Virus record (IMG/VR): IMGVR_UViG_3300032562_000004
Span: 171,813-235,812 of that record
DNA length: 64,000 nucleotides
Strand: one strand, 5' to 3'
This document shows, piece by piece, positions 951 through 50,421 of this stretch. How positions within the stretch are numbered: the stretch's first letter is position 1; each line of letters opens with the position of its first letter. Position numbers and translations under genes: made by a program. The notes beneath the pieces are model-generated. The model was not told the DNA's origin and did not search any database. It was given only the letters and a program-made list of their open reading frames with translations.

Positions 951-1292
951 CTGTTATTTTCTGTTTCGACGGATAACTCCGCAAAGCAGTGATTAAACTG
1001 CTAATGTTTGGCGTTGTGCTGTACGAGCAGAGAAACGAATTCCCTTACCTGAAACAGTTACTTCGCCTTTAGATGCGTTTGCATTTAAGTTTTTCGCTTG
1101 ATTTACAGTCATCGCCTACTGTGTTGCCTCTTTCATTATCTCACCATGTCGAAACCTTGTCATCCCCACTGAAACATACTACAGCTTTTGGCCTCGCTAC
1201 CGATAACTCGGTTCGGTAATATGCTTCGGTGGAGATGCCGGGAATCGAACCCGGGTCCACAGCGCCTTCACTACGAAGGAATTACAACAATT
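951..1292 (-). ncRNA. ssrA: Circularly permuted (two-piece) tmRNA: acceptor piece ~1292..1228, intervening segment 1227..1168, coding piece 1167..~951
   Basis: T-arm plus 3' acceptor strand GGACCCGGGTTCGATTCCCGG-CATCTCC-ACC precedes the 5' strand GGGGATG-ACAAGGTTTCGAC. The 7-bp acceptor stem has G3.U70. A resume context AAACTTAAAT-GCA-AAC is followed by a tag ORF. Confidence 0.9.
993..1082 (-). other. tmRNA tag reading frame ANASKGEVTVSGKGIRFSARTAQRQTLAV*
   Basis: Resume codon GCA at 1082..1080, 29 sense codons, TAA at 995..993. Confidence 0.8.
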
Positions 1293-1294
1293 CT

Positions 1295-1498
1295 TTACAG
1301 CGGAAGAATATTTGATGCTTGCTTGCCTTTAGGGCCTGCCACTACATCGAATGTTACCGCTTGATTCTCTTTTAAACTCTTAAAACCATTTGTGCTAATT
1401 GCGGAAAAATGTGCAAACAATTCCTCACCACCAGCATCGGGGGTAATAAATCCAAACCCTTTTGCATCATTAAACCACTTTACTTTACCTGTTGCCAT
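1295..1498 (-). CDS. cspA: Cold-shock protein (CSD)
   Basis: [18 protein letters not shown] (RNP1) and LFAHFSAI (RNP2), 67 aa. Confidence 0.97.
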
Positions 1499-1784: not shown

Positions 1785-1860
1785 TGGTGGTCCGGGTAGG
1801 ACTTGCACCCACACTCCCCGAATTATGAGTTCGACGCTTTACTTTTTAAGCTACCGGGCC
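1785..1860 (-). tRNA. tRNA with CAU anticodon, probably Ile2 (lysidine type) rather than Met
   Basis: GGCCCGG...TCGAA-CTCATAA-TTCGG...GTGGG-TGCAAGT-CCTAC-CCGGACC-A-CCA, 76 nt with encoded CCA. C4-G69/C5-G68 pairs favour Ile2. Confidence 0.88.
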
Positions 1861-2265: not shown

Positions 2266-2553
2266 TCAAGGATATACTTTTTCGCCTTGCTTGAGTAACA
2301 CTACGCTAAACTTATCAGTTTTGAATTGTGTGTTGAGTTTTTTGGCAAGATTGATTGCGTGACCTGGATTACTAAAACTTACTTTTTTATATTTAGGTCC
2401 AGGGTACTGAACTAATAAATTAGAAGTTTTAAGATTAACTGGTTTATTATCAAAGTAAACGGCCCATACTCCTTCCGAAGCAAGTACTTGCTCGGTTTTG
2501 TATGTTTGCTTGTTTGTAAGCTCAGCTAAAATGGTTGGCTTGGGGCGACTCAC
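2266..2553 (-). CDS. Hypothetical phage protein (MSRPKPT...)
   Basis: 95-aa ORF, GTG start overlapping the upstream stop (GTGA). Confidence 0.75.
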   Translation of the reverse strand: MSRPKPTILAELTNKQTYKTEQVLASEGVWAVYFDNKPVNLKTSNLLVQYPGPKYKKVSFSNPGHAINLAKKLNTQFKTDKFSVVLLKQGEKVYP

Positions 2554-3152
2554 TTAGAATTCCTTTTGAATAGTTCTTTTCGTGCTTCAGATATTTTTTT
2601 ACAAGTTTCTGGAGAACGCTTTTTACCTTTGTGGAGCAACGATATTTTTTGTTTGAATTCCTCACTTCGTGGAACCATTATTTGTTTAGCTCTAGCATCT
2701 TTTATTTTTTGTTTTGTTTCGTCACTATGCTTTTTTCCTAACATAGTAGGCGCTTGTTTTGCTCTAGCAGTTCGAATCTTTTCTTTACTAGACTCTGTAT
2801 GTCTATAGTTTTTACTATTTTCTCTAATTTTTTGTCTAGTGGACTCTTTTACAGTACCGTAACTACCTCCCATTAATCCATCTTCGGGTTTAATGTTAGC
2901 CCATTCTGCTGACTCGACAATTTTGTTTTCTGTAGAAAATTTTAAAGCGTATTCGACTAATGTTTCTTTATTATCGAATAGCTGACACCAAACGGTAGTA
3001 ACATCTAGACCGTGTTTATTAAGATGTGCCCGCCAGTGTACGCCAGATCCTAAATATTTGTTAGGATCCCGTATAGTTTTTCCAAAGTATTTTAGACCGG
3101 TAGTATTATGTTGCTTAATGTACAACCAGGTAGGTTTAAACGGTTTCGACAT
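2550..3152 (-). mobile_element. Free-standing GIY-YIG homing endonuclease with NUMOD3-type repeats
   Basis: WLYIKQHNTTGLKYFGKT...YLGSG..W N-terminus, ANIKPEDG, and repeats HTESSKEKIR / HSDETKQKIK / RSEEFKQKIS. Confidence 0.85.
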
Positions 3153-3190
3153 AGTATATTATTTAGTCATAATATACCTACTTATTTCAT

Positions 3191-3403
3191 TTATTTGAAC
3201 CCACCGCCATCAATTTTAAGTTCAATAACCTGGTCCTGCTGGGGCTTTAATGCGGCTGTTTGTAGGGTTCTAAGTTCAAGTAATAGCTCGGTTAAGTCCG
3301 CGGCCATGCCTTTAGCATCTTTCATTGGCATAACAAAGTCTTTACTACCCCGAGCATCATTACCTCGAACCCGCTCAATAAATTTTTGTAAGTGTAAGCT
3401 CAA
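3191..3403 (-). CDS. Hypothetical protein
   Basis: 70-aa ORF in operon. Confidence 0.7.
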   Translation of the reverse strand: MSLHLQKFIERVRGNDARGSKDFVMPMKDAKGMAADLTELLLELRTLQTAALKPQQDQVIELKIDGGGFK

Positions 3404-3774
3404 TGTTCTCTCTTTAAAAAGTTAGCTAGCTTAGGTGGTTCCCATCCCAATGGTTTAAGAATTTTACCATCTTCACGACGGCGTACTTTGCCCAGTTGAC
3501 GGTCAATTTTGGCAAAGTTAGTAGCCATTACCTCACGCCAAGCACCTTCACCATCTGCGCCCATCGAATTGATTGCTCCGATAGTAACGACAATAATATC
3601 GATTAAAGCATCAAGAGTTTCAACTTGATTTTTATTAGCAATAGCTACTTGTAGCTCGTCGTATTCTTCTGTAATCAATTTGGAGTAAAGTCTAAACTGA
3701 TCATCATTCATGCCTGAGATAGTCTGCTCGCAAGCTGTCATAAATTTTGCTGAATCCTTAAACGGGTTTGTCAT
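3400..3774 (-). CDS. MazG-like/all-alpha NTP pyrophosphohydrolase
   Basis: EEYDEL...ETLDALIDIIVV...SNFAK-like and GKILKP motifs. Start moved to ATG 3774 (MTNPFKD), which overlaps the upstream stop. Confidence 0.8.
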   Translation of the reverse strand: MTNPFKDSAKFMTACEQTISGMNDDQFRLYSKLITEEYDELQVAIANKNQVETLDALIDIIVVTIGAINSMGADGEGAWREVMATNFAKIDRQLGKVRRREDGKILKPLGWEPPKLANFLKREH

Positions 3775-4391
3775 ACTTTTTCCTTTTTCTTTAATTGTGC
3801 GTTGCGTCTTGCTTCGGACCAAGGCTTACCTTTATGCTGTGATCCATAAATCTTTTTTCTCTCTTCTTCTGTAAGAGAACTTCTATGTTGTAATGCCTTT
3901 TCTTGCATCACTACTTTTGTATCTTCTGAATGTTCTTTATCTCTAAACGGATTATTTTCCTTCATCCATTCTCTGTGTTTTTCTTTTCTTCTCTTTGCTT
4001 CTTCTTTATCCTGTTGTATCTCTTCGTAAGTCTTGCCTTTGTTTTTACCTGGCTTACCTCTGCTGGCATTGCCTATTTTAGTTTTTGCTTCTTCGGTATG
4101 ACTAAACGGACCACCATCGCCTGCTTCTGGTTTTAAGTTAGCCCACTCTGGACTATCTACTACCTGCCATAAGTCACTGTAGTACAGGCCCCAGGCTCTT
4201 ATTTCTTCATTATCTTTACACTCTTTTAATATTTCTGTATCAACATCATTGCCGTGTTTCTCGATATGAGCTGACCAACGCTTACCAGAACCTTTGTAAG
4301 TGTACGGATCTTGATTAGTCTTACCTAAATATTTTAATCCGGTTTTACGATGAGTTTTAATGTACAAGTAAATCATATTGTACTTAGTCAT
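3771..4391 (-). mobile_element. Free-standing GIY-YIG homing endonuclease
   Basis: YLYIKTHRKTGLKYLGKT..DPYTYKGSG, WANLKPEAGDGG, NUMOD3-like HTEEAKTKI / HSEDTK. Confidence 0.85.
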
Positions 4392-4408
4392 CGTAAAGGG
4401 TTAGTCAT

Positions 4409-4585
4409 TTATTTCTCTTGTATCTTTTTCACTTCTATACAAGCCCATCCCGATGCTGATTTAACAAGTACTCCATCATTCATTTCGCATTGGTTAGCTC
4501 TTTGTATTTGCTGATAAATCAAAAAAGGAACGGATAACAATATCAATAAAAGTATTGGCGGCCAAATTTTTTCAATTAAATTCAT
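4409..4585 (-). CDS. Small membrane protein (not in ORF track)
   Basis: Manual translation MNLIEKIWPPILLLILLSVPFLIYQQIQRANQCEMNDGVLVKSASGWACIEVKKIQEK*, 58 aa with one hydrophobic helix; overlaps the upstream stop. Confidence 0.7.
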   Translation of the reverse strand: MNLIEKIWPPILLLILLSVPFLIYQQIQRANQCEMNDGVLVKSASGWACIEVKKIQEK

Positions 4586-5031
4586 TTAGGTAGTGCCTCT
4601 TCTTTAGTTTGAAATGGACCCTCGTAAGGGTAGCGTTGTAATACAATTAATTTAGGATCTTGCATAGCCGCCCAATGACGACCTTTCTTGACTGTGTACC
4701 AACCAGCCGCATACCAAGATTTACTTTTCTTTGTTTTAGTGTAAACTGGTAGCTTTTGTGGAACGTCCCACATAGGATTATATACACGACCTGCTGCCGG
4801 AAAGCCATGTACTATATTGGTTGTTTTCTTTTTCTCAGGTTTAATAATAGCTTCAAAAGTAACATTGATATTTCGTTCAACTAATTTAATACTTTTGTAT
4901 TGTGCTACTACTTGATTATTAATCTTAACTTGATAGCCGCCATCGCAGGCTTCAATGTTCCCTACTTTATTATTATTTTCTTGTAAAATCCAAAACTGTT
5001 TATCTATTACGGGTTTAGCTACTAGACTCAT
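4582..5031 (-). CDS. Hypothetical phage protein
   Basis: 149-aa ORF in operon. Confidence 0.7.
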   Translation of the reverse strand: MSLVAKPVIDKQFWILQENNNKVGNIEACDGGYQVKINNQVVAQYKSIKLVERNINVTFEAIIKPEKKKTTNIVHGFPAAGRVYNPMWDVPQKLPVYTKTKKSKSWYAAGWYTVKKGRHWAAMQDPKLIVLQRYPYEGPFQTKEEALPK

Positions 5032-5597: not shown

Positions 5598-6338
5598 ATG
5601 ACTATTTACACGCTTTACATTAAGACGCATAAGAAAACAGGACTAAAATATTTAGGTCAAACTCATTACGATCCCTATGAATACAAAGGTTCGGGGATTG
5701 ATTGGAAAAAACATATTAAACAGTATGGAGACGATATTACTACTCAAGTTATTTATTCCGGAAAAAATCGTAATGAAATGTCGTCCTTGGGCAGATATTA
5801 CAGCAACCTATACCGCATTACAACTTCTGTGGATGATTTTGGCAACAGAATTTGGGCTAACAGAACTATAGAAAACGGTGGAGGCGGATGGAACATAGGT
5901 AAAACATACTCTACAGAAGAACGAAAAAAGTTTGGGCATACTAAGCATAAGGGTTCTAAACGAACAGATAAACAAAAACAAAAAATGAAGGATAATCACG
6001 CAGATTTTTCTGGTAGCAATAATCCTAACTATGGCAAAAAAGCAAAAGATTCAACACTTACAAAAATGAGAGTCTCAAAAGTAAGAGTATGTCGCATAGT
6101 TGATCGCAAAGAAATGTCTGTAAACGAACTTACTGGCTGGATTAAGCGAGGCTGTAATCTAAAAGACAACTATCGACATGATCCTACTATCTATTCATTT
6201 ACTAACCTAATAACTAACGAAACTATTACTGCTACTAAACGAGAAATGATTGAACGATACAATCTAGATCAAAGTGCTATGAGTAGAGTATTAACCAGAA
6301 AGTTAAAATCTACTAAGGGATGGTCTTTAACTTTGTAG
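5598..6338 (+). mobile_element. Free-standing GIY-YIG homing endonuclease, antisense to flanking genes
   Basis: TLYIKTHKKTGLKYLGQT..DPYEYKGSG, WANRTIENGGG, GSNNPNYGK and a C-terminal HTH-like tail; overlaps the RNase H 3' end. Confidence 0.85.
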
Positions 6339-7328
6339 TGATCCAGTGTAGTGCTTATTAAGCCAATCACCAAATGTTGCTGCGTTTTCGCTTACCTTTG
6401 TAAGTTCGTAACGCCCACAAAATTTAAGGAAGTGACTACCAACTTGTCCTACATCCTTGTGACTAATTTGTTCCTTAATAGTATCATCTACTACTTCTTT
6501 AACATCATCTGGTTGCGCTGTTAAATCTACTAATGCTACATTACGCTGATAATCGTCCAACACACGATGTTCTACACCATCTGGATCCGTCCAGCGTTGT
6601 AGCATCATATTGTTCCAATTATATCCCTTTTTGTCCTTGTCAGCGAATGCCTCCACAAGGCCAACCTTGTTTTTAGTGCCCTTTGTTCTGACACCGGGAA
6701 ATGCCGAAAAGACATTGTCGCTCGAATCGCCGCGCATACATTTCTCAAAAAGTAACCACTGTGGATCCGGTATTGTTTTTGGTTCTTTAGTTTTCTTGTC
6801 GATGACTGGTCTACCTTTGGCATCAAAGATTCCTTCTATAGTATGTAATTCGTCGGTAATTCCGTTATACTGCTTGACATTTTGTGCTAATAATTGAACA
6901 AAGTCAGTATCACTGCTGATAATAACGTGTTCATCTTGTGGATGTAATGCGATCCAACGAGCTATAATATCATCCCCTTCTGCTGTTGGGCAACGGATAA
7001 CACTACAGTTTGTTTTCTCTGACAAGTATTTAGTCAAGGAATCATAGGTTTCCCAGAACATCTTATCTTCTTCTTGTTCTGCTTCTGTAAGCGCAGCTCT
7101 AGATACAGCACGATTAGCCTTATATGGTTTGTAGAAGTCTTTGCGCCAACTGCGCCCTTCTAAAGCAAATACCACATGATCCGCCTCAAATCGACGAGCC
7201 ATTTTGTTAGCGGCCATTAATGTTACATGGAGGGCAAATCCTACCTTTTCCCAAGTATCACTAGCACGAAAGGCTCCATGTCTAGCACGAAAGAAAAGAT
7301 TAGCGGTATCTATAAGAACATATTTCAT
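6327..7328 (-). CDS. rnh: T4 RNase H-like 5'-3' exonuclease (FEN family)
   Basis: LIDTANLFFR, EGDDII, ISSDTDFVQL, GDSSDNV motifs. Confidence 0.9.
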   Translation of the reverse strand: MKYVLIDTANLFFRARHGAFRASDTWEKVGFALHVTLMAANKMARRFEADHVVFALEGRSWRKDFYKPYKANRAVSRAALTEAEQEEDKMFWETYDSLTKYLSEKTNCSVIRCPTAEGDDIIARWIALHPQDEHVIISSDTDFVQLLAQNVKQYNGITDELHTIEGIFDAKGRPVIDKKTKEPKTIPDPQWLLFEKCMRGDSSDNVFSAFPGVRTKGTKNKVGLVEAFADKDKKGYNWNNMMLQRWTDPDGVEHRVLDDYQRNVALVDLTAQPDDVKEVVDDTIKEQISHKDVGQVGSHFLKFCGRYELTKVSENAATFGDWLNKHYTGSLQS

Positions 7329-48994: not shown

Positions 48995-49789
48995 TTACTT
49001 CTTTTGTGCTTCTTTGATAAGATTGGTTAGTTCGTCACTTAGGCTAGATGGCATTTTGGCATGAATTCTAACTAATAAATCGCCAACAGGTCCTTGGCGT
49101 GAAGCTAGTCCTCTACCTTTCAGACGCAATAGTCCGCCTGGCTGTGTTAACGGTGGAATGGTTAAAGTTAATTGGTTACCCAAAATATCTTTTACTTCTG
49201 TTTCTCCGCCAACTAAACAATCCCAAATAGATACTTGCTGGTCCATTGTTAAGTTTAATCCTTGGCGATGCCATTTTGGATGTTGATGTATTCTAAAATT
49301 AACAATTAAATCTGTGTTACCAGGACCTATGCCAGGATATTGAATATTATCGCCATCGTTAAGTCCCAATGGGATTTCTATTTCAATTGTCATTGAGCCT
49401 TGCTGTGTACCTACAGTAACAGGCCGCTTGCCGCCTTGTGCTACATCTTGTAATGTTACCCATAAGCTCATTCTGGTATGGGTTTGTCGTTGCTGTCCTG
49501 GATGTTGATGCCCTGGATGAAACTGTGCGCCAAACATACTAAAGATATTGTTAAAATCGAACCCGCCACCATTAAATTCAAAATGTATATTTTGATTAGG
49601 ATTATCGTATTGGGCTCGTTTACTAGGATCGCTTAATGTTTCATAAGCCGACTGAACCGATTGAAATTTAGCTTTATCGCCACCTTCGCGGTCTGGATGA
49701 TACTTTGCCGCCATACGGCGATATGCTTTTTTAATATCGTCAGCAGACGCATTACGGTCTACTCCTAAGGTTTGATAGTGATCTGTCAT
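48995..49789 (-). CDS. dnaJ: DnaJ/CbpA-type co-chaperone (J-domain + C-terminal domain, no zinc finger)
   Basis: [10 protein letters not shown]...YHPD..GD...AYETLSD; LRLKGRG..GDLLV. Confidence 0.92.
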
Positions 49790-50385
49790 ATTGTAATAAA
49801 TGTGCAATTTTTTCGTATTAGATAGGGAGATAAATTTGTAGCCGCCATTGCTTCTCTAATAGAAGCATATTCAATACCATTAAGTAATAACGGTTTTGAG
49901 GCGGCGTTCTCTTTACCTGTCCTGTTGCCTTTTTGTTTTTGACTGCTCTTACGTTTTCTATCATTGGAACAAGGTATTCCATATAATGGATGATTACTAC
50001 CTTTCATTCGTTCGCTTTGTGCTGGATTCTTCTTACCGCCCCAGACACTTAGCTCACCGACGTATACACCTTTTAATGCTTTACTTCGTTTGGCTCGAAC
50101 TTCTGGAGATATATTACTTCCGCCTTCGCCGCCATCTGTTTGATTTGCTAATATGCCAGTACCGATGTCTTTGCGCCCAAACTTTTTAATAAGTTTTTTT
50201 TCGAGGTCAAACGCTTCCTCCTCAAATAAAGATTTGGCAATTATTATAATTCGATTTTTATCTGATGGTGGTTTATAAGTGCGTTTTTTTGACCATGCTC
50301 GATCACCGGACCCCTTACCTATGTAGTAAGGGGATTGCCCGTCTTTACGAAGATAAGCATAAACATAGAATTTTGGGTCAGTCAT
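49786..50385 (-). mobile_element. Free-standing GIY-YIG homing endonuclease
   Basis: FYVYAYLR...PYYIGKG...E...N.TDGGEG; NUMOD3-like tail; own TTTACA-N17-TATAAT promoter. Confidence 0.88.
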
Positions 50386-50421
50386 AATATTAATTATACT
50401 ACAAACAACCTGCGGTGTAAA

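What the first reader, a model, noticed from the sequence alone, without database searches (positions are those of the whole stretch)
2550..4408. Homing endonucleases that sit on the start codon of a target gene and mimic its N-terminus
Seen: before the 3771..4391 endonuclease is a 6-codon stub ATG ACT AAC CCT TTA CGA TGA (MTNPLR*, 4408..4388). The MazG-like gene downstream starts MTNPFK. The stub looks like the original 5' end, and the element appears to supply a replacement start. The 2550..3152 endonuclease starts MSKPFKPT and its downstream gene starts MSRPKPT. The 49786..50385 endonuclease starts MTD and DnaJ starts MTDH. All three are coupled to the downstream gene by an A/GTGA stop-start overlap. 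Inference: an intron-less homing strategy that inserts at translation starts and rebuilds the target N-terminus, which keeps the target expressed and makes the cut site immune.
Basis: partly seen in the sequence, partly recalled or inferred. Interest (0 to 1): 0.6.

Follow-up and report, generated by a model that had tools for sequence, protein, structure and literature searches.

The report
Homing endonucleases that duplicate gene starts
In an uncultivated jumbo phage, three selfish endonuclease genes are inserted a few codons into neighbouring genes. Each carries a re-coded copy of the displaced start so the host gene stays whole, a 5'-end mirror image of a trick so far described in fungal mitochondria.

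Summary
The sequence features are all present as described.

Comparison with about 150 related IMG/VR phage loci shows they are not chance.

- **Endonuclease-free relatives.** p149 overlaps the MazG start directly, p95 follows a conserved hairpin, and DnaJ follows a sigma-70-like promoter.
- **MazG site.** The six-codon stub MTNPLR* is the displaced MazG 5' end. It sits at the left edge of every version of this endonuclease element (58-100% identical). It is never seen at this locus without the endonuclease.
- **p95 site.** The second endonuclease starts on p95's own start codon and keeps about seven of its codons. p95 restarts with GTG and re-coded codons that are linked to the endonuclease.
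- **DnaJ site.** The third endonuclease took over DnaJ's promoter and ATG. The MTD match alone is at chance level.
- **Recent movement.** One endonuclease is 602/603 nt identical in two genomes whose flanking genes are 76-81% identical.

The position of the cut, the immunity of the cut site and the translational coupling are not tested. "Mimicry" is really duplication or capture. ATGA overlaps are normal in this genome.

The closest precedent is the fungal mitochondrial mobile ORFs that duplicate gene C-termini. I rate this a new variant of a known kind.

The parts
4582..5031 (-). p149, the conserved upstream gene. In endonuclease-free relatives its TGA overlaps the MazG ATG directly.
4409..4585 (-). 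p58, a lineage-specific small membrane-like ORF. It starts on the ATGA where MazG would start in relatives.
4388..4408 (-). Stub MTNPLR*: the displaced native 5' end of MazG (family consensus MTNPFRD). It is the left edge of the endonuclease element.
3771..4391 (-). HEG2: Seg-like endonuclease with a GIY-YIG fold and a NUMOD3 motif. The family core starts at the internal ATG at 4376 (MIYLYIK).
3400..3774 (-). MazG-like pyrophosphohydrolase. Its rebuilt start (3757-3774) reads MTNPFK, with an atypical K at position 6.
3191..3403 (-). p70, a conserved gene between MazG and the p95 site.
3153..3178 (-). 10-bp hairpin with a TAAATA late-promoter-like motif directly before the ATG. It precedes p95 in endonuclease-free relatives and precedes HEG1 here.
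2550..3152 (-). HEG1: Seg-like endonuclease. Its first 8 codons (3129-3152) are the captured p95 start (ATGTC...AAACCTAC).
2266..2553 (-). p95, a highly conserved gene of unknown function. Here it restarts with GTG and re-coded codons (2530-2553) overlapping the HEG1 stop.
50393..50421 (-). Sigma-70-like promoter TTTACA-17-TATAAT, 7 nt before the HEG3 ATG. The same architecture precedes DnaJ in endonuclease-free relatives.
49786..50385 (-). HEG3: an endonuclease with GIY-YIG-type motifs (phrog_314). It sits on the former DnaJ start.
48995..49789 (-). DnaJ. Its ATG overlaps the HEG3 TGA and has no promoter of its own.

Best explanation
These are free-standing homing-endonuclease cassettes with a GIY-YIG-type fold, no intron and no intein. 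Each is inserted inside the first 3-8 codons of a conserved phage gene.

Anatomy (shown).
- Each cassette carries at its 3' end a start codon plus a re-coded copy of the displaced codons. This copy overlaps the endonuclease stop codon, so the target ORF is complete again.
- The native start region stays upstream. It serves as the endonuclease's own promoter, start codon and first codons (p95 and DnaJ sites), or it ends at once as a 6-codon stub (MazG site).

Mechanism (inferred).
- The endonuclease cuts the endonuclease-free allele at or near the insertion point.
- Repair uses the native start region as the left homology arm and the gene body as the right arm, as the exons do for an intron-borne endonuclease.
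- Insertion splits the target site. The re-coded right-hand copy escapes re-cutting and lowers the repeat homology that could delete the cassette.
- The target gene is translated by termination-reinitiation after the endonuclease.

Likely origin (inferred). The founder events probably arose by one-sided repair. The right end of the break invaded a donor homologously. The left end, still carrying the recipient's first codons, was joined illegitimately in front of the endonuclease.
For: - Presence/absence at fixed sites. 125 of 139 related loci have only a 27-68 nt p70-p95 spacer, and 14 have a HEG1-type insert. In most MazG alleles the p149 stop codon overlaps the MazG start region (4 nt, ATGA, in the closest relatives; up to about 20 nt in more distant ones).
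- HEG1. The sequence upstream, including the hairpin and ATGTC, is the same as that upstream of p95 in the closest endonuclease-free relative L007. AAACCTAC (KPT) is kept in three HEG1 versions 62-100% identical.
- p95 in the window differs from L007 at 9 of the first 24 nt. It is then identical for 68 nt.
- Recent movement. HEG1 is 602/603 nt identical in L001 and L012, while p70, p95, MazG and p149 are 76-81% identical.
- The stub MTNP[LF]R* is present in all HEG2-at-MazG versions. These sit behind four unrelated upstream contexts, and homology among the elements begins at the stub ATG.
- In all of IMG/VR the stub pattern gives 24 hits. Eighteen are followed by this endonuclease and 6 lie in unrelated contexts, about the number expected by chance.
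- Rebuilt MazG starts are atypical in every HEG2+ lineage: K6, an ATT start, or loss of codon 2, with P to V as well in one lineage.
- The DnaJ promoter and ATG of endonuclease-free relatives now precede HEG3.
- The N-terminal domain model (pLDDT about 96) has the I-TevI catalytic domain as its top three PDB matches.
- No intron family was found in the window.
Against: - No cleavage site is known. Free-standing Seg and Mob enzymes often cut at a distance from their gene (own knowledge; PMC2988022).
- Two paralogous endonucleases in the same genome, HEG4 (5598-6338, + strand) and HEG5 (outside the window), show no capture.
- The HEG3 homologue in L247 shows no N-terminal similarity to its DnaJ.
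- A methyltransferase insert without an endonuclease (L078) shows the same duplication, and L072/L103 carry a stub plus a rebuilt start with no insert. In that lineage the left copy also encodes the overlapping p149 C-terminus. So the duplication can arise, or be selected, independently of an endonuclease.
- Atypical MazG N-termini also occur in some endonuclease-free alleles.
- The catalytic Arg position is not invariant in the family. Neither Pfam GIY-YIG nor a profile search of PDB sequences hits it.
Confidence: 0.6

Rival explanations
1. Passive scar. The duplicated starts are only by-products of illegitimate, one-sided recombination at gene starts in a recombination hot spot. They persist because both flanking reading frames must stay intact. 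They play no part in targeting, homology or immunity.
For: - The same duplication flanks a methyltransferase gene in L078, as a 17-nt repeat with 16/17 identity, and a no-insert scar in L072/L103.
- The p149-MazG junction carries at least eight unrelated inserts, including an HNH endonuclease on the other strand.
- HEG4 and HEG5 lack the feature.
Against: - The stub is kept, with mostly third-position changes, in elements whose endonucleases are only 58-74% identical. It marks the exact left limit of homology.
- Three of the four inserted ORFs (HEG1, HEG3 and the L078 methyltransferase) are fused in frame to the target start; in the fourth (HEG2) the copied start ends at once at an in-frame stop.
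- The pattern recurs at three sites and in two distinct endonuclease types within one genome.
Confidence: 0.25
2. Regulatory leader. The retained native start region mainly throttles endonuclease expression. It could be an operator that resembles the homing site (autorepression, as for I-TevI). It could also act as a mini-ORF or leaderless start that allows only weak, late translation.
For: [quoted passage not shown] Hairpin plus late-promoter control and coupling to upstream ORFs are also documented there (PMC2988022).
- A hairpin with TAAATA precedes HEG1.
- TGATAAATA follows the stub in four HEG2 versions.
- A promoter lies 7 nt before the HEG3 ATG.
Against: - It does not explain why the target's codons are duplicated downstream.
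- The TAAATA motif is degraded in the window's own HEG2.
- It is compatible with the main explanation and does not exclude it.
Confidence: 0.12
3. Coincidence. The short N-terminal resemblances and the ATGA overlaps are chance features of a compact operon.
For: - MTD/MTD is at chance level.
- 15 of 84 neighbouring gene pairs have 4-nt overlaps.
Against: - Endonuclease-free relatives show positional identity of promoters, hairpin and start codons.
- The stub co-occurs strictly with the endonuclease.
- The HEG1/p95 pair lies in the top 0.1% of the null distribution.
Confidence: 0.03

Closest known systems
Mobile endonuclease ORFs (mORFs) of fungal mitochondria that create hybrid genes (Allomyces macrogynus atp6; Glomus atp6, atp9, cox2, nad3; PMC3630166)
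   Same: - An endonuclease ORF (GIY-YIG or LAGLIDADG) is inserted inside a protein-coding gene without an intron.
- The element carries a foreign, diverged copy of the displaced gene terminus, which keeps the reading frame.
- The native terminus is left behind as a remnant.
- The ORF is often in phase with the host gene.
   Different: - Here the 5' end, not the 3' end, is duplicated. Only 3-8 codons are involved, not tens of codons.
- The native copy is reused as the endonuclease's own start.
- The host gene is restarted through a stop-start overlap.
- The host is a bacteriophage.
Free-standing Seg and Mob homing endonucleases of T4-like phages ('intronless homing'; review PMC2988022)
   Same: - Intron-less endonuclease genes between conserved genes, variable among relatives.
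- GIY-YIG N-terminal domain with C-terminal DNA-binding motifs.
- Overlap with neighbouring ORFs that suggests translational coupling.
- Hairpin and late-promoter control.
- Flanking markers are co-converted.
   Different: - The T4 examples are described as intergenic, or as overlapping the upstream gene.
- The review does not describe capture of the downstream gene's start codon and first codons, nor a duplicated N-terminus.
Aeromonas phage Aeh1 mobE, which splits nrdA (own knowledge; mobE is also discussed in PMC2988022)
   Same: A free-standing endonuclease inserted inside a coding sequence without an intron or intein, with the host function retained.
   Different: There the gene is split into two polypeptides that reassemble. 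Here the short 5' piece is duplicated, so a single full-length protein is made.
Intron- or intein-borne homing endonucleases such as I-TevI
   Same: - Proposed geometry only: the insertion point lies within the gene, flanking gene segments act as homology arms, and insertion splits the target site.
- The fold of the catalytic domain matches I-TevI.
   Different: No splicing element is present: no Rfam intron hit and the ORFs are contiguous. Gene integrity is restored by duplication, not by splicing.

Membership tests
Free-standing GIY-YIG (Seg-like) homing endonuclease | GIY-YIG catalytic fold (beta-beta-alpha-beta-alpha) | tested here: met
   AlphaFold2 model of HEG2 on a 38-sequence alignment: mean pLDDT 87, about 96 over residues 11-90, with the order E7-14, E20-25, H37-46, E50-58, H61-75. 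The top three Foldseek PDB matches are the I-TevI catalytic domain (1mk0, 1ln0): TM 0.64-0.68 by target and rmsd 2.5-2.9 A, but E-values of only 0.02-0.17.
Free-standing GIY-YIG (Seg-like) homing endonuclease | Conserved catalytic residues (Tyr of GIY, Tyr of YIG, Arg, His, Glu, Asn) | tested here: inconclusive
   Y10, Y21, H42, N85 and E89 are invariant in 38 sequences. R38, which I place at the I-TevI Arg27 position by motif comparison from memory, is not invariant. Pfam GIY-YIG is not hit, and a profile search of PDB sequences finds nothing. phrog_314 'homing endonuclease' is hit at E 1e-12 to 5e-16. Relatives in isolates are annotated as GIY-YIG homing endonucleases.
Free-standing GIY-YIG (Seg-like) homing endonuclease | C-terminal DNA-binding module | tested here: met
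   NUMOD3 is hit above the Pfam cut-off in HEG1, HEG2 and HEG4. In HEG3 it is below the cut-off.
Free-standing GIY-YIG (Seg-like) homing endonuclease | Presence/absence polymorphism at a fixed site among related genomes | tested here: met
Free-standing GIY-YIG (Seg-like) homing endonuclease | Signs of recent horizontal movement (the element is much more similar than its flanks) | tested here: met
   HEG1 is 99.8% identical between L001 and L012, against 76-81% for p70, p95, MazG and p149. This could not be tested for HEG2 or HEG3, because their only identical copies lie in near-identical genomes.
Free-standing GIY-YIG (Seg-like) homing endonuclease | Site-specific cleavage of the endonuclease-free allele and super-Mendelian inheritance | not testable with these tools
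   Needs enzyme assays and phage crosses.
Free-standing GIY-YIG (Seg-like) homing endonuclease | Not embedded in an intron or intein | tested here: met
   No intron family is found in the window at Rfam gathering scores. The ORFs abut with 4-nt overlaps.
mORF-type element that duplicates a gene terminus (fungal mitochondria) | Endonuclease ORF inserted within the coding region, carrying a replacement copy of the displaced terminus, with the native copy left as a remnant | tested here: met
   Insertion points lie after about codon 6-7 (MazG), codon 7-8 (p95) and codon 3 (DnaJ). The native copy sits upstream and the replacement copy downstream.
mORF-type element that duplicates a gene terminus (fungal mitochondria) | The replacement copy is more diverged from the closest element-free relative than the rest of the gene | tested here: met
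   In p95, 9 of the first 24 nt differ from L007 and the next 68 nt are identical. The Ser codon is AGT in the replacement copy and TCN in the native copy.
mORF-type element that duplicates a gene terminus (fungal mitochondria) | Duplication of the C-terminal (3') part of a mitochondrial gene | tested here: not met
   Here the 5' end of phage genes is duplicated. It works like a mORF but is not a member of that group.

The most novel reading that the evidence does not exclude
A third way, besides introns and inteins, for a homing endonuclease to live inside an essential or conserved gene. It inserts just after the start and carries a re-coded 'mini-exon 1' at its 3' end. The retained native start then has three roles. 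It is the left homology arm for homing, half of the split (hence immune) target site, and the endonuclease's own, possibly leaderless, translation start. If so, the ends of the duplicated segment would mark the cleavage sites to within a few bases.
Probability: 0.4. Interest if true: 0.75.

Novelty: new variant of a known kind. Interest (0 to 1): 0.6.

Why it matters
- It shows how selfish nucleases can colonise the inside of conserved phage genes without any splicing machinery. This widens the set of sites open to homing.
- It explains some short 'orphan' mini-ORFs and odd GTG or ATT starts in phage annotations.
- It predicts cleavage sites from sequence alone, which can be tested directly in vitro.
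- It links phage endonuclease biology with the mitochondrial mORF 'hybrid gene' phenomenon.
- It bears on how gene starts act as recombination boundaries in mosaic phage genomes.

Tried and rejected
- **DNA searches of isolate phages.** Near and distant DNA searches of the region against INPHARED phages found nothing. Relatives came only from IMG/VR.
- **PDB sequence search.** A profile search of PDB sequences with the endonuclease alignment gave no meaningful hit. Only the fold search recovered I-TevI.
- **L052 as a HEG1-deletion scar.** Its p95 starts GTGAGTCGG. Only AAGTGAGTCG is shared with the HEG1 3' end, so this stays undecided.
- **Generality.**
  - HEG4 (5598-6338, + strand) and HEG5 (L165:1574-2251) show no capture.
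  - Other inserted ORFs in relatives do not share N-termini with the downstream gene. These include a 410-aa ORF between p95 and p122 and a 279-aa ORF before p149.
  - Most of the 51 distinct family members sampled from IMG/VR show no obvious capture outside the MazG site.
- **HEG3 relatives.** The single-sequence scan found only one diverged homologue, L247. It sits at the same DnaJ site with an ATGA overlap but shows no N-terminal similarity.
- **HEG2's MTK start.** I first read it as a copy of MazG's MTN. I rejected this because, in other versions of the element, that stretch is TGATAAATA followed by a separate ATG.
Full report
**Context.**
- The window is part of a 158.5-kb IMG/VR virus record estimated to be 45% complete.
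- Related records reach 344 kb with terminal repeats, so this is an uncultivated jumbo phage.
- INPHARED isolates share no DNA similarity with the region.
- IMG/VR holds hundreds of relatives of the flanking genes, and 153 loci were fetched.
- On the - strand the gene order is p149, p58, stub, HEG2, MazG, p70, HEG1, p95, p122.

**Observation.**
- The true MazG ATG is at 3774-3772.
- 4-nt stop-start overlaps are common here: 15 of 84 same-strand neighbour pairs have one. The overlaps themselves are therefore unremarkable.
- By residues alone, MSKPFKPT against MSRPKPT lies in the top 0.1% of a null of 3,828 gene pairs.
- MTD against MTD is at chance level.

**The endonucleases.**
- HEG1, HEG2, a + strand copy (5598-6338) and a copy outside the window form one family.
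- They have NUMOD3 motifs and hit phrog_314 'homing endonuclease'.
- A model of HEG2 built on 38 homologues is confident: mean pLDDT 87, and about 96 for the N-terminal domain.
- Its three best PDB matches are the catalytic domain of I-TevI, with TM 0.64-0.68 by target.
- Pfam GIY-YIG and a PDB sequence-profile search do not detect the domain, and the expected Arg is not invariant. The fold is therefore GIY-YIG, but the active site is not fully canonical.
- HEG3 has GIY-YIG-type sequence motifs and also hits phrog_314.
- No intron family is found in the window.

**The p95 site.**
- In 125 of 139 related loci, p70 and p95 are separated by 27-68 nt. Fourteen loci carry a HEG1-type insert.
- The closest endonuclease-free relative is L007 (p70 98.6% and p122 100% identical).
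  - In L007 a 10-bp hairpin containing TAAATA is followed by ATG TCC CGT CCA AAA CCT ACG, which is the p95 start.
  - The window has the same hairpin followed by ATG TCG AAA CCG TTT AAA CCT ACC TGG, which is the HEG1 start.
- AAACCTAC (KPT) is kept in three HEG1 versions that are 62-100% identical. Paralogues at other sites lack this N-terminal extension.
- Downstream, p95 restarts with GTG in all four distinct HEG1+ alleles, overlapping the endonuclease stop.
- Against L007, the window's p95 differs at 9 of the first 24 nt, including Ser AGT against TCC. It is then identical for 68 nt. The replacement start therefore came in with the endonuclease, and the right-hand recombination boundary sits at about codon 8. 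That matches the length of the segment captured at the HEG1 N-terminus.
- HEG1 is 602/603 nt identical in L001 and L012, whose p70, p95, MazG and p149 are 76-81% identical. This is direct evidence of recent movement.

**The MazG site.**
- In most alleles the p149 stop codon overlaps the MazG start region. The overlap is 4 nt (ATGA) in the closest relatives and up to about 20 nt in more distant ones. The MazG N-terminus is MTNPFRD(Q).
- The junction is a hot spot. It holds at least eight unrelated inserts:
  - several small ORFs;
  - a 154-aa ORF;
  - a three-ORF block;
  - a 383-aa ORF;
  - a methyltransferase;
  - an HNH endonuclease on the other strand in L007.
- HEG2-type elements occur in at least six versions, 58-100% identical at the protein level. 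They sit behind four unrelated upstream contexts.
- All versions carry the stub ATGACNAAYCCNTT[AY]C[GT][AG]TGA. Homology among the elements begins at the stub ATG.
- Five of the six variable stub positions are codon third positions.
- In four versions the stub stop is followed by TAAATA and a separate ATG (MIYLYIK). The window's MTKYN extension is therefore a junction artefact.
- The stub pattern occurs in no HEG2-free MazG locus.
- In all of IMG/VR the pattern gives 24 hits. Eighteen are followed by this endonuclease. Six lie in unrelated contexts, which is within my own rough estimate of chance matches, about 17.
- Rebuilt MazG starts are atypical in every HEG2+ lineage: K6, an ATT start, or loss of codon 2, with P to V as well in one lineage. 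This fits immunising changes, but such variants also occur in some endonuclease-free alleles.

**The DnaJ site.**
- Endonuclease-free relatives have a TTGnnn-17-TATAAT promoter 6-10 nt, or a short hairpin leader, before ATGA[GC]TGA[CT] of DnaJ.
- In the window the same kind of promoter (11/12 match) ends 7 nt before the HEG3 ATG ACT GAC.
- DnaJ restarts at ATG ACA GAT, inside the HEG3 stop.
- L247 carries a 63%-identical homologue in the same position, with an ATGA overlap but no N-terminal resemblance.
- Takeover of the start position is therefore solid. Residue sharing at this site is weak.

**Limits of the pattern.**
- Two paralogous endonucleases in this genome do not follow it, nor do several other inserted ORFs.
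- Conversely, a methyltransferase insert in L078 starts VTNLFRD. This is the MazG N-terminus, which in that lineage overlaps the p149 3' end. The insert is flanked by a 17-nt repeat with 16/17 identity.
- L072 and L103 carry a stub plus a rebuilt start with no insert.
- The duplication is therefore not exclusive to endonucleases.

**Interpretation.**
- *Shown:* insertion inside the first codons of the gene; duplication of those codons; linkage of the re-coded copy to the endonuclease; conservation of the stub as the element's left edge; recent mobility of HEG1.
- *Inferred:* cleavage at the insertion point; the stub or native start acting as the left homology arm; immunity through site splitting and re-coding; translational reinitiation of the target; origin by one-sided homologous repair with an illegitimate left junction.
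- *Leaderless-like starts:* promoter-like motifs lie only a few nt before the p95 and DnaJ ATGs. These would give a simple reason why an inserted ORF must take over the very start codon.

**Comparison with what is known.**
- The T4 review describes intergenic Seg and Mob genes, overlaps with upstream ORFs, hairpin and late-promoter control, and operators that resemble homing sites. My term search of it turned up no N-terminal capture.
- A survey of nuclease genes at phage recombination boundaries does not describe it either.
- The nearest precedent is the mitochondrial mORF 'hybrid gene' arrangement. There the element brings a foreign C-terminal copy and the native C-terminus remains as a remnant (PMC3630166).
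- The phage case is the 5' mirror image, with much shorter duplications and reuse of the native copy as the endonuclease's own start.
- I therefore rate it a new variant of a known kind and of moderate to good interest.

Noticed in passing
window 1024-1330 (-), with tRNA-Met at 1785-1860 (-): A phage-encoded tmRNA. Rfam beta_tmRNA scores 117.6 bits and tmRNA_permuted 118.4 bits, and ARAGORN gives a tag peptide. It hints at a betaproteobacterial host. A CspA-like ORF (1295-1498) lies next to it.
   Followed up: partly
L007:5001, L010:1381, L040:5001, L043:5001, L047:5001: MazG alleles with ATT in place of ATG. All of them have AAGGAG 7 nt upstream, while ATG alleles in the same context have AAGGAA. 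This looks like a real ATT start with a compensating stronger SD. It could also be an endonuclease-escape variant.
   Followed up: partly
L007:4345-4908 (-): An HNH_3 endonuclease on the opposite strand occupies the same p149/MazG junction in the closest relative. This indicates turnover of different endonuclease families at one site.
   Followed up: partly
L078:1084-1728; L072:3150-3190; L103: A methyltransferase-like ORF is fused to the MazG N-terminus (VTNLFRD), with a 17-nt flanking repeat. L072 and L103 look like its deletion scar: a stub, about 12 nt of spacer with an SD, and a new ATG.
   Followed up: partly
L052:5340-5425 (six loci of this class): p95 starts GTGAGTCGG, as in HEG1-linked alleles, but there is no endonuclease and the 68-nt spacer is unrelated. 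It is either a scar of endonuclease loss or the source lineage of the replacement start.
   Followed up: partly
L177, L179, L182, L187, L192, L196, L200 and others, about 45 nt upstream of the endonuclease ATG: Many members of the same endonuclease family share the upstream context CCAACTACTCTAAyGCT..AAGGAGCAnCAGC. This points to another common insertion site, whose gene or RNA was not identified.
   Followed up: no
window 5598-6338 (+): A fourth Seg-like endonuclease lies on the strand opposite to almost all other genes. Its 3' end overlaps the 3' end of the flap-endonuclease-like gene (6327-7328, -) by 12 nt.
   Followed up: no
L001 vs L012, p122 and beyond (L001:6520-6888): p122 is 100% identical between two genomes whose neighbouring p95 is only 80.6% identical. 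A second recombination boundary therefore sits at the p95/p122 junction.
   Followed up: no
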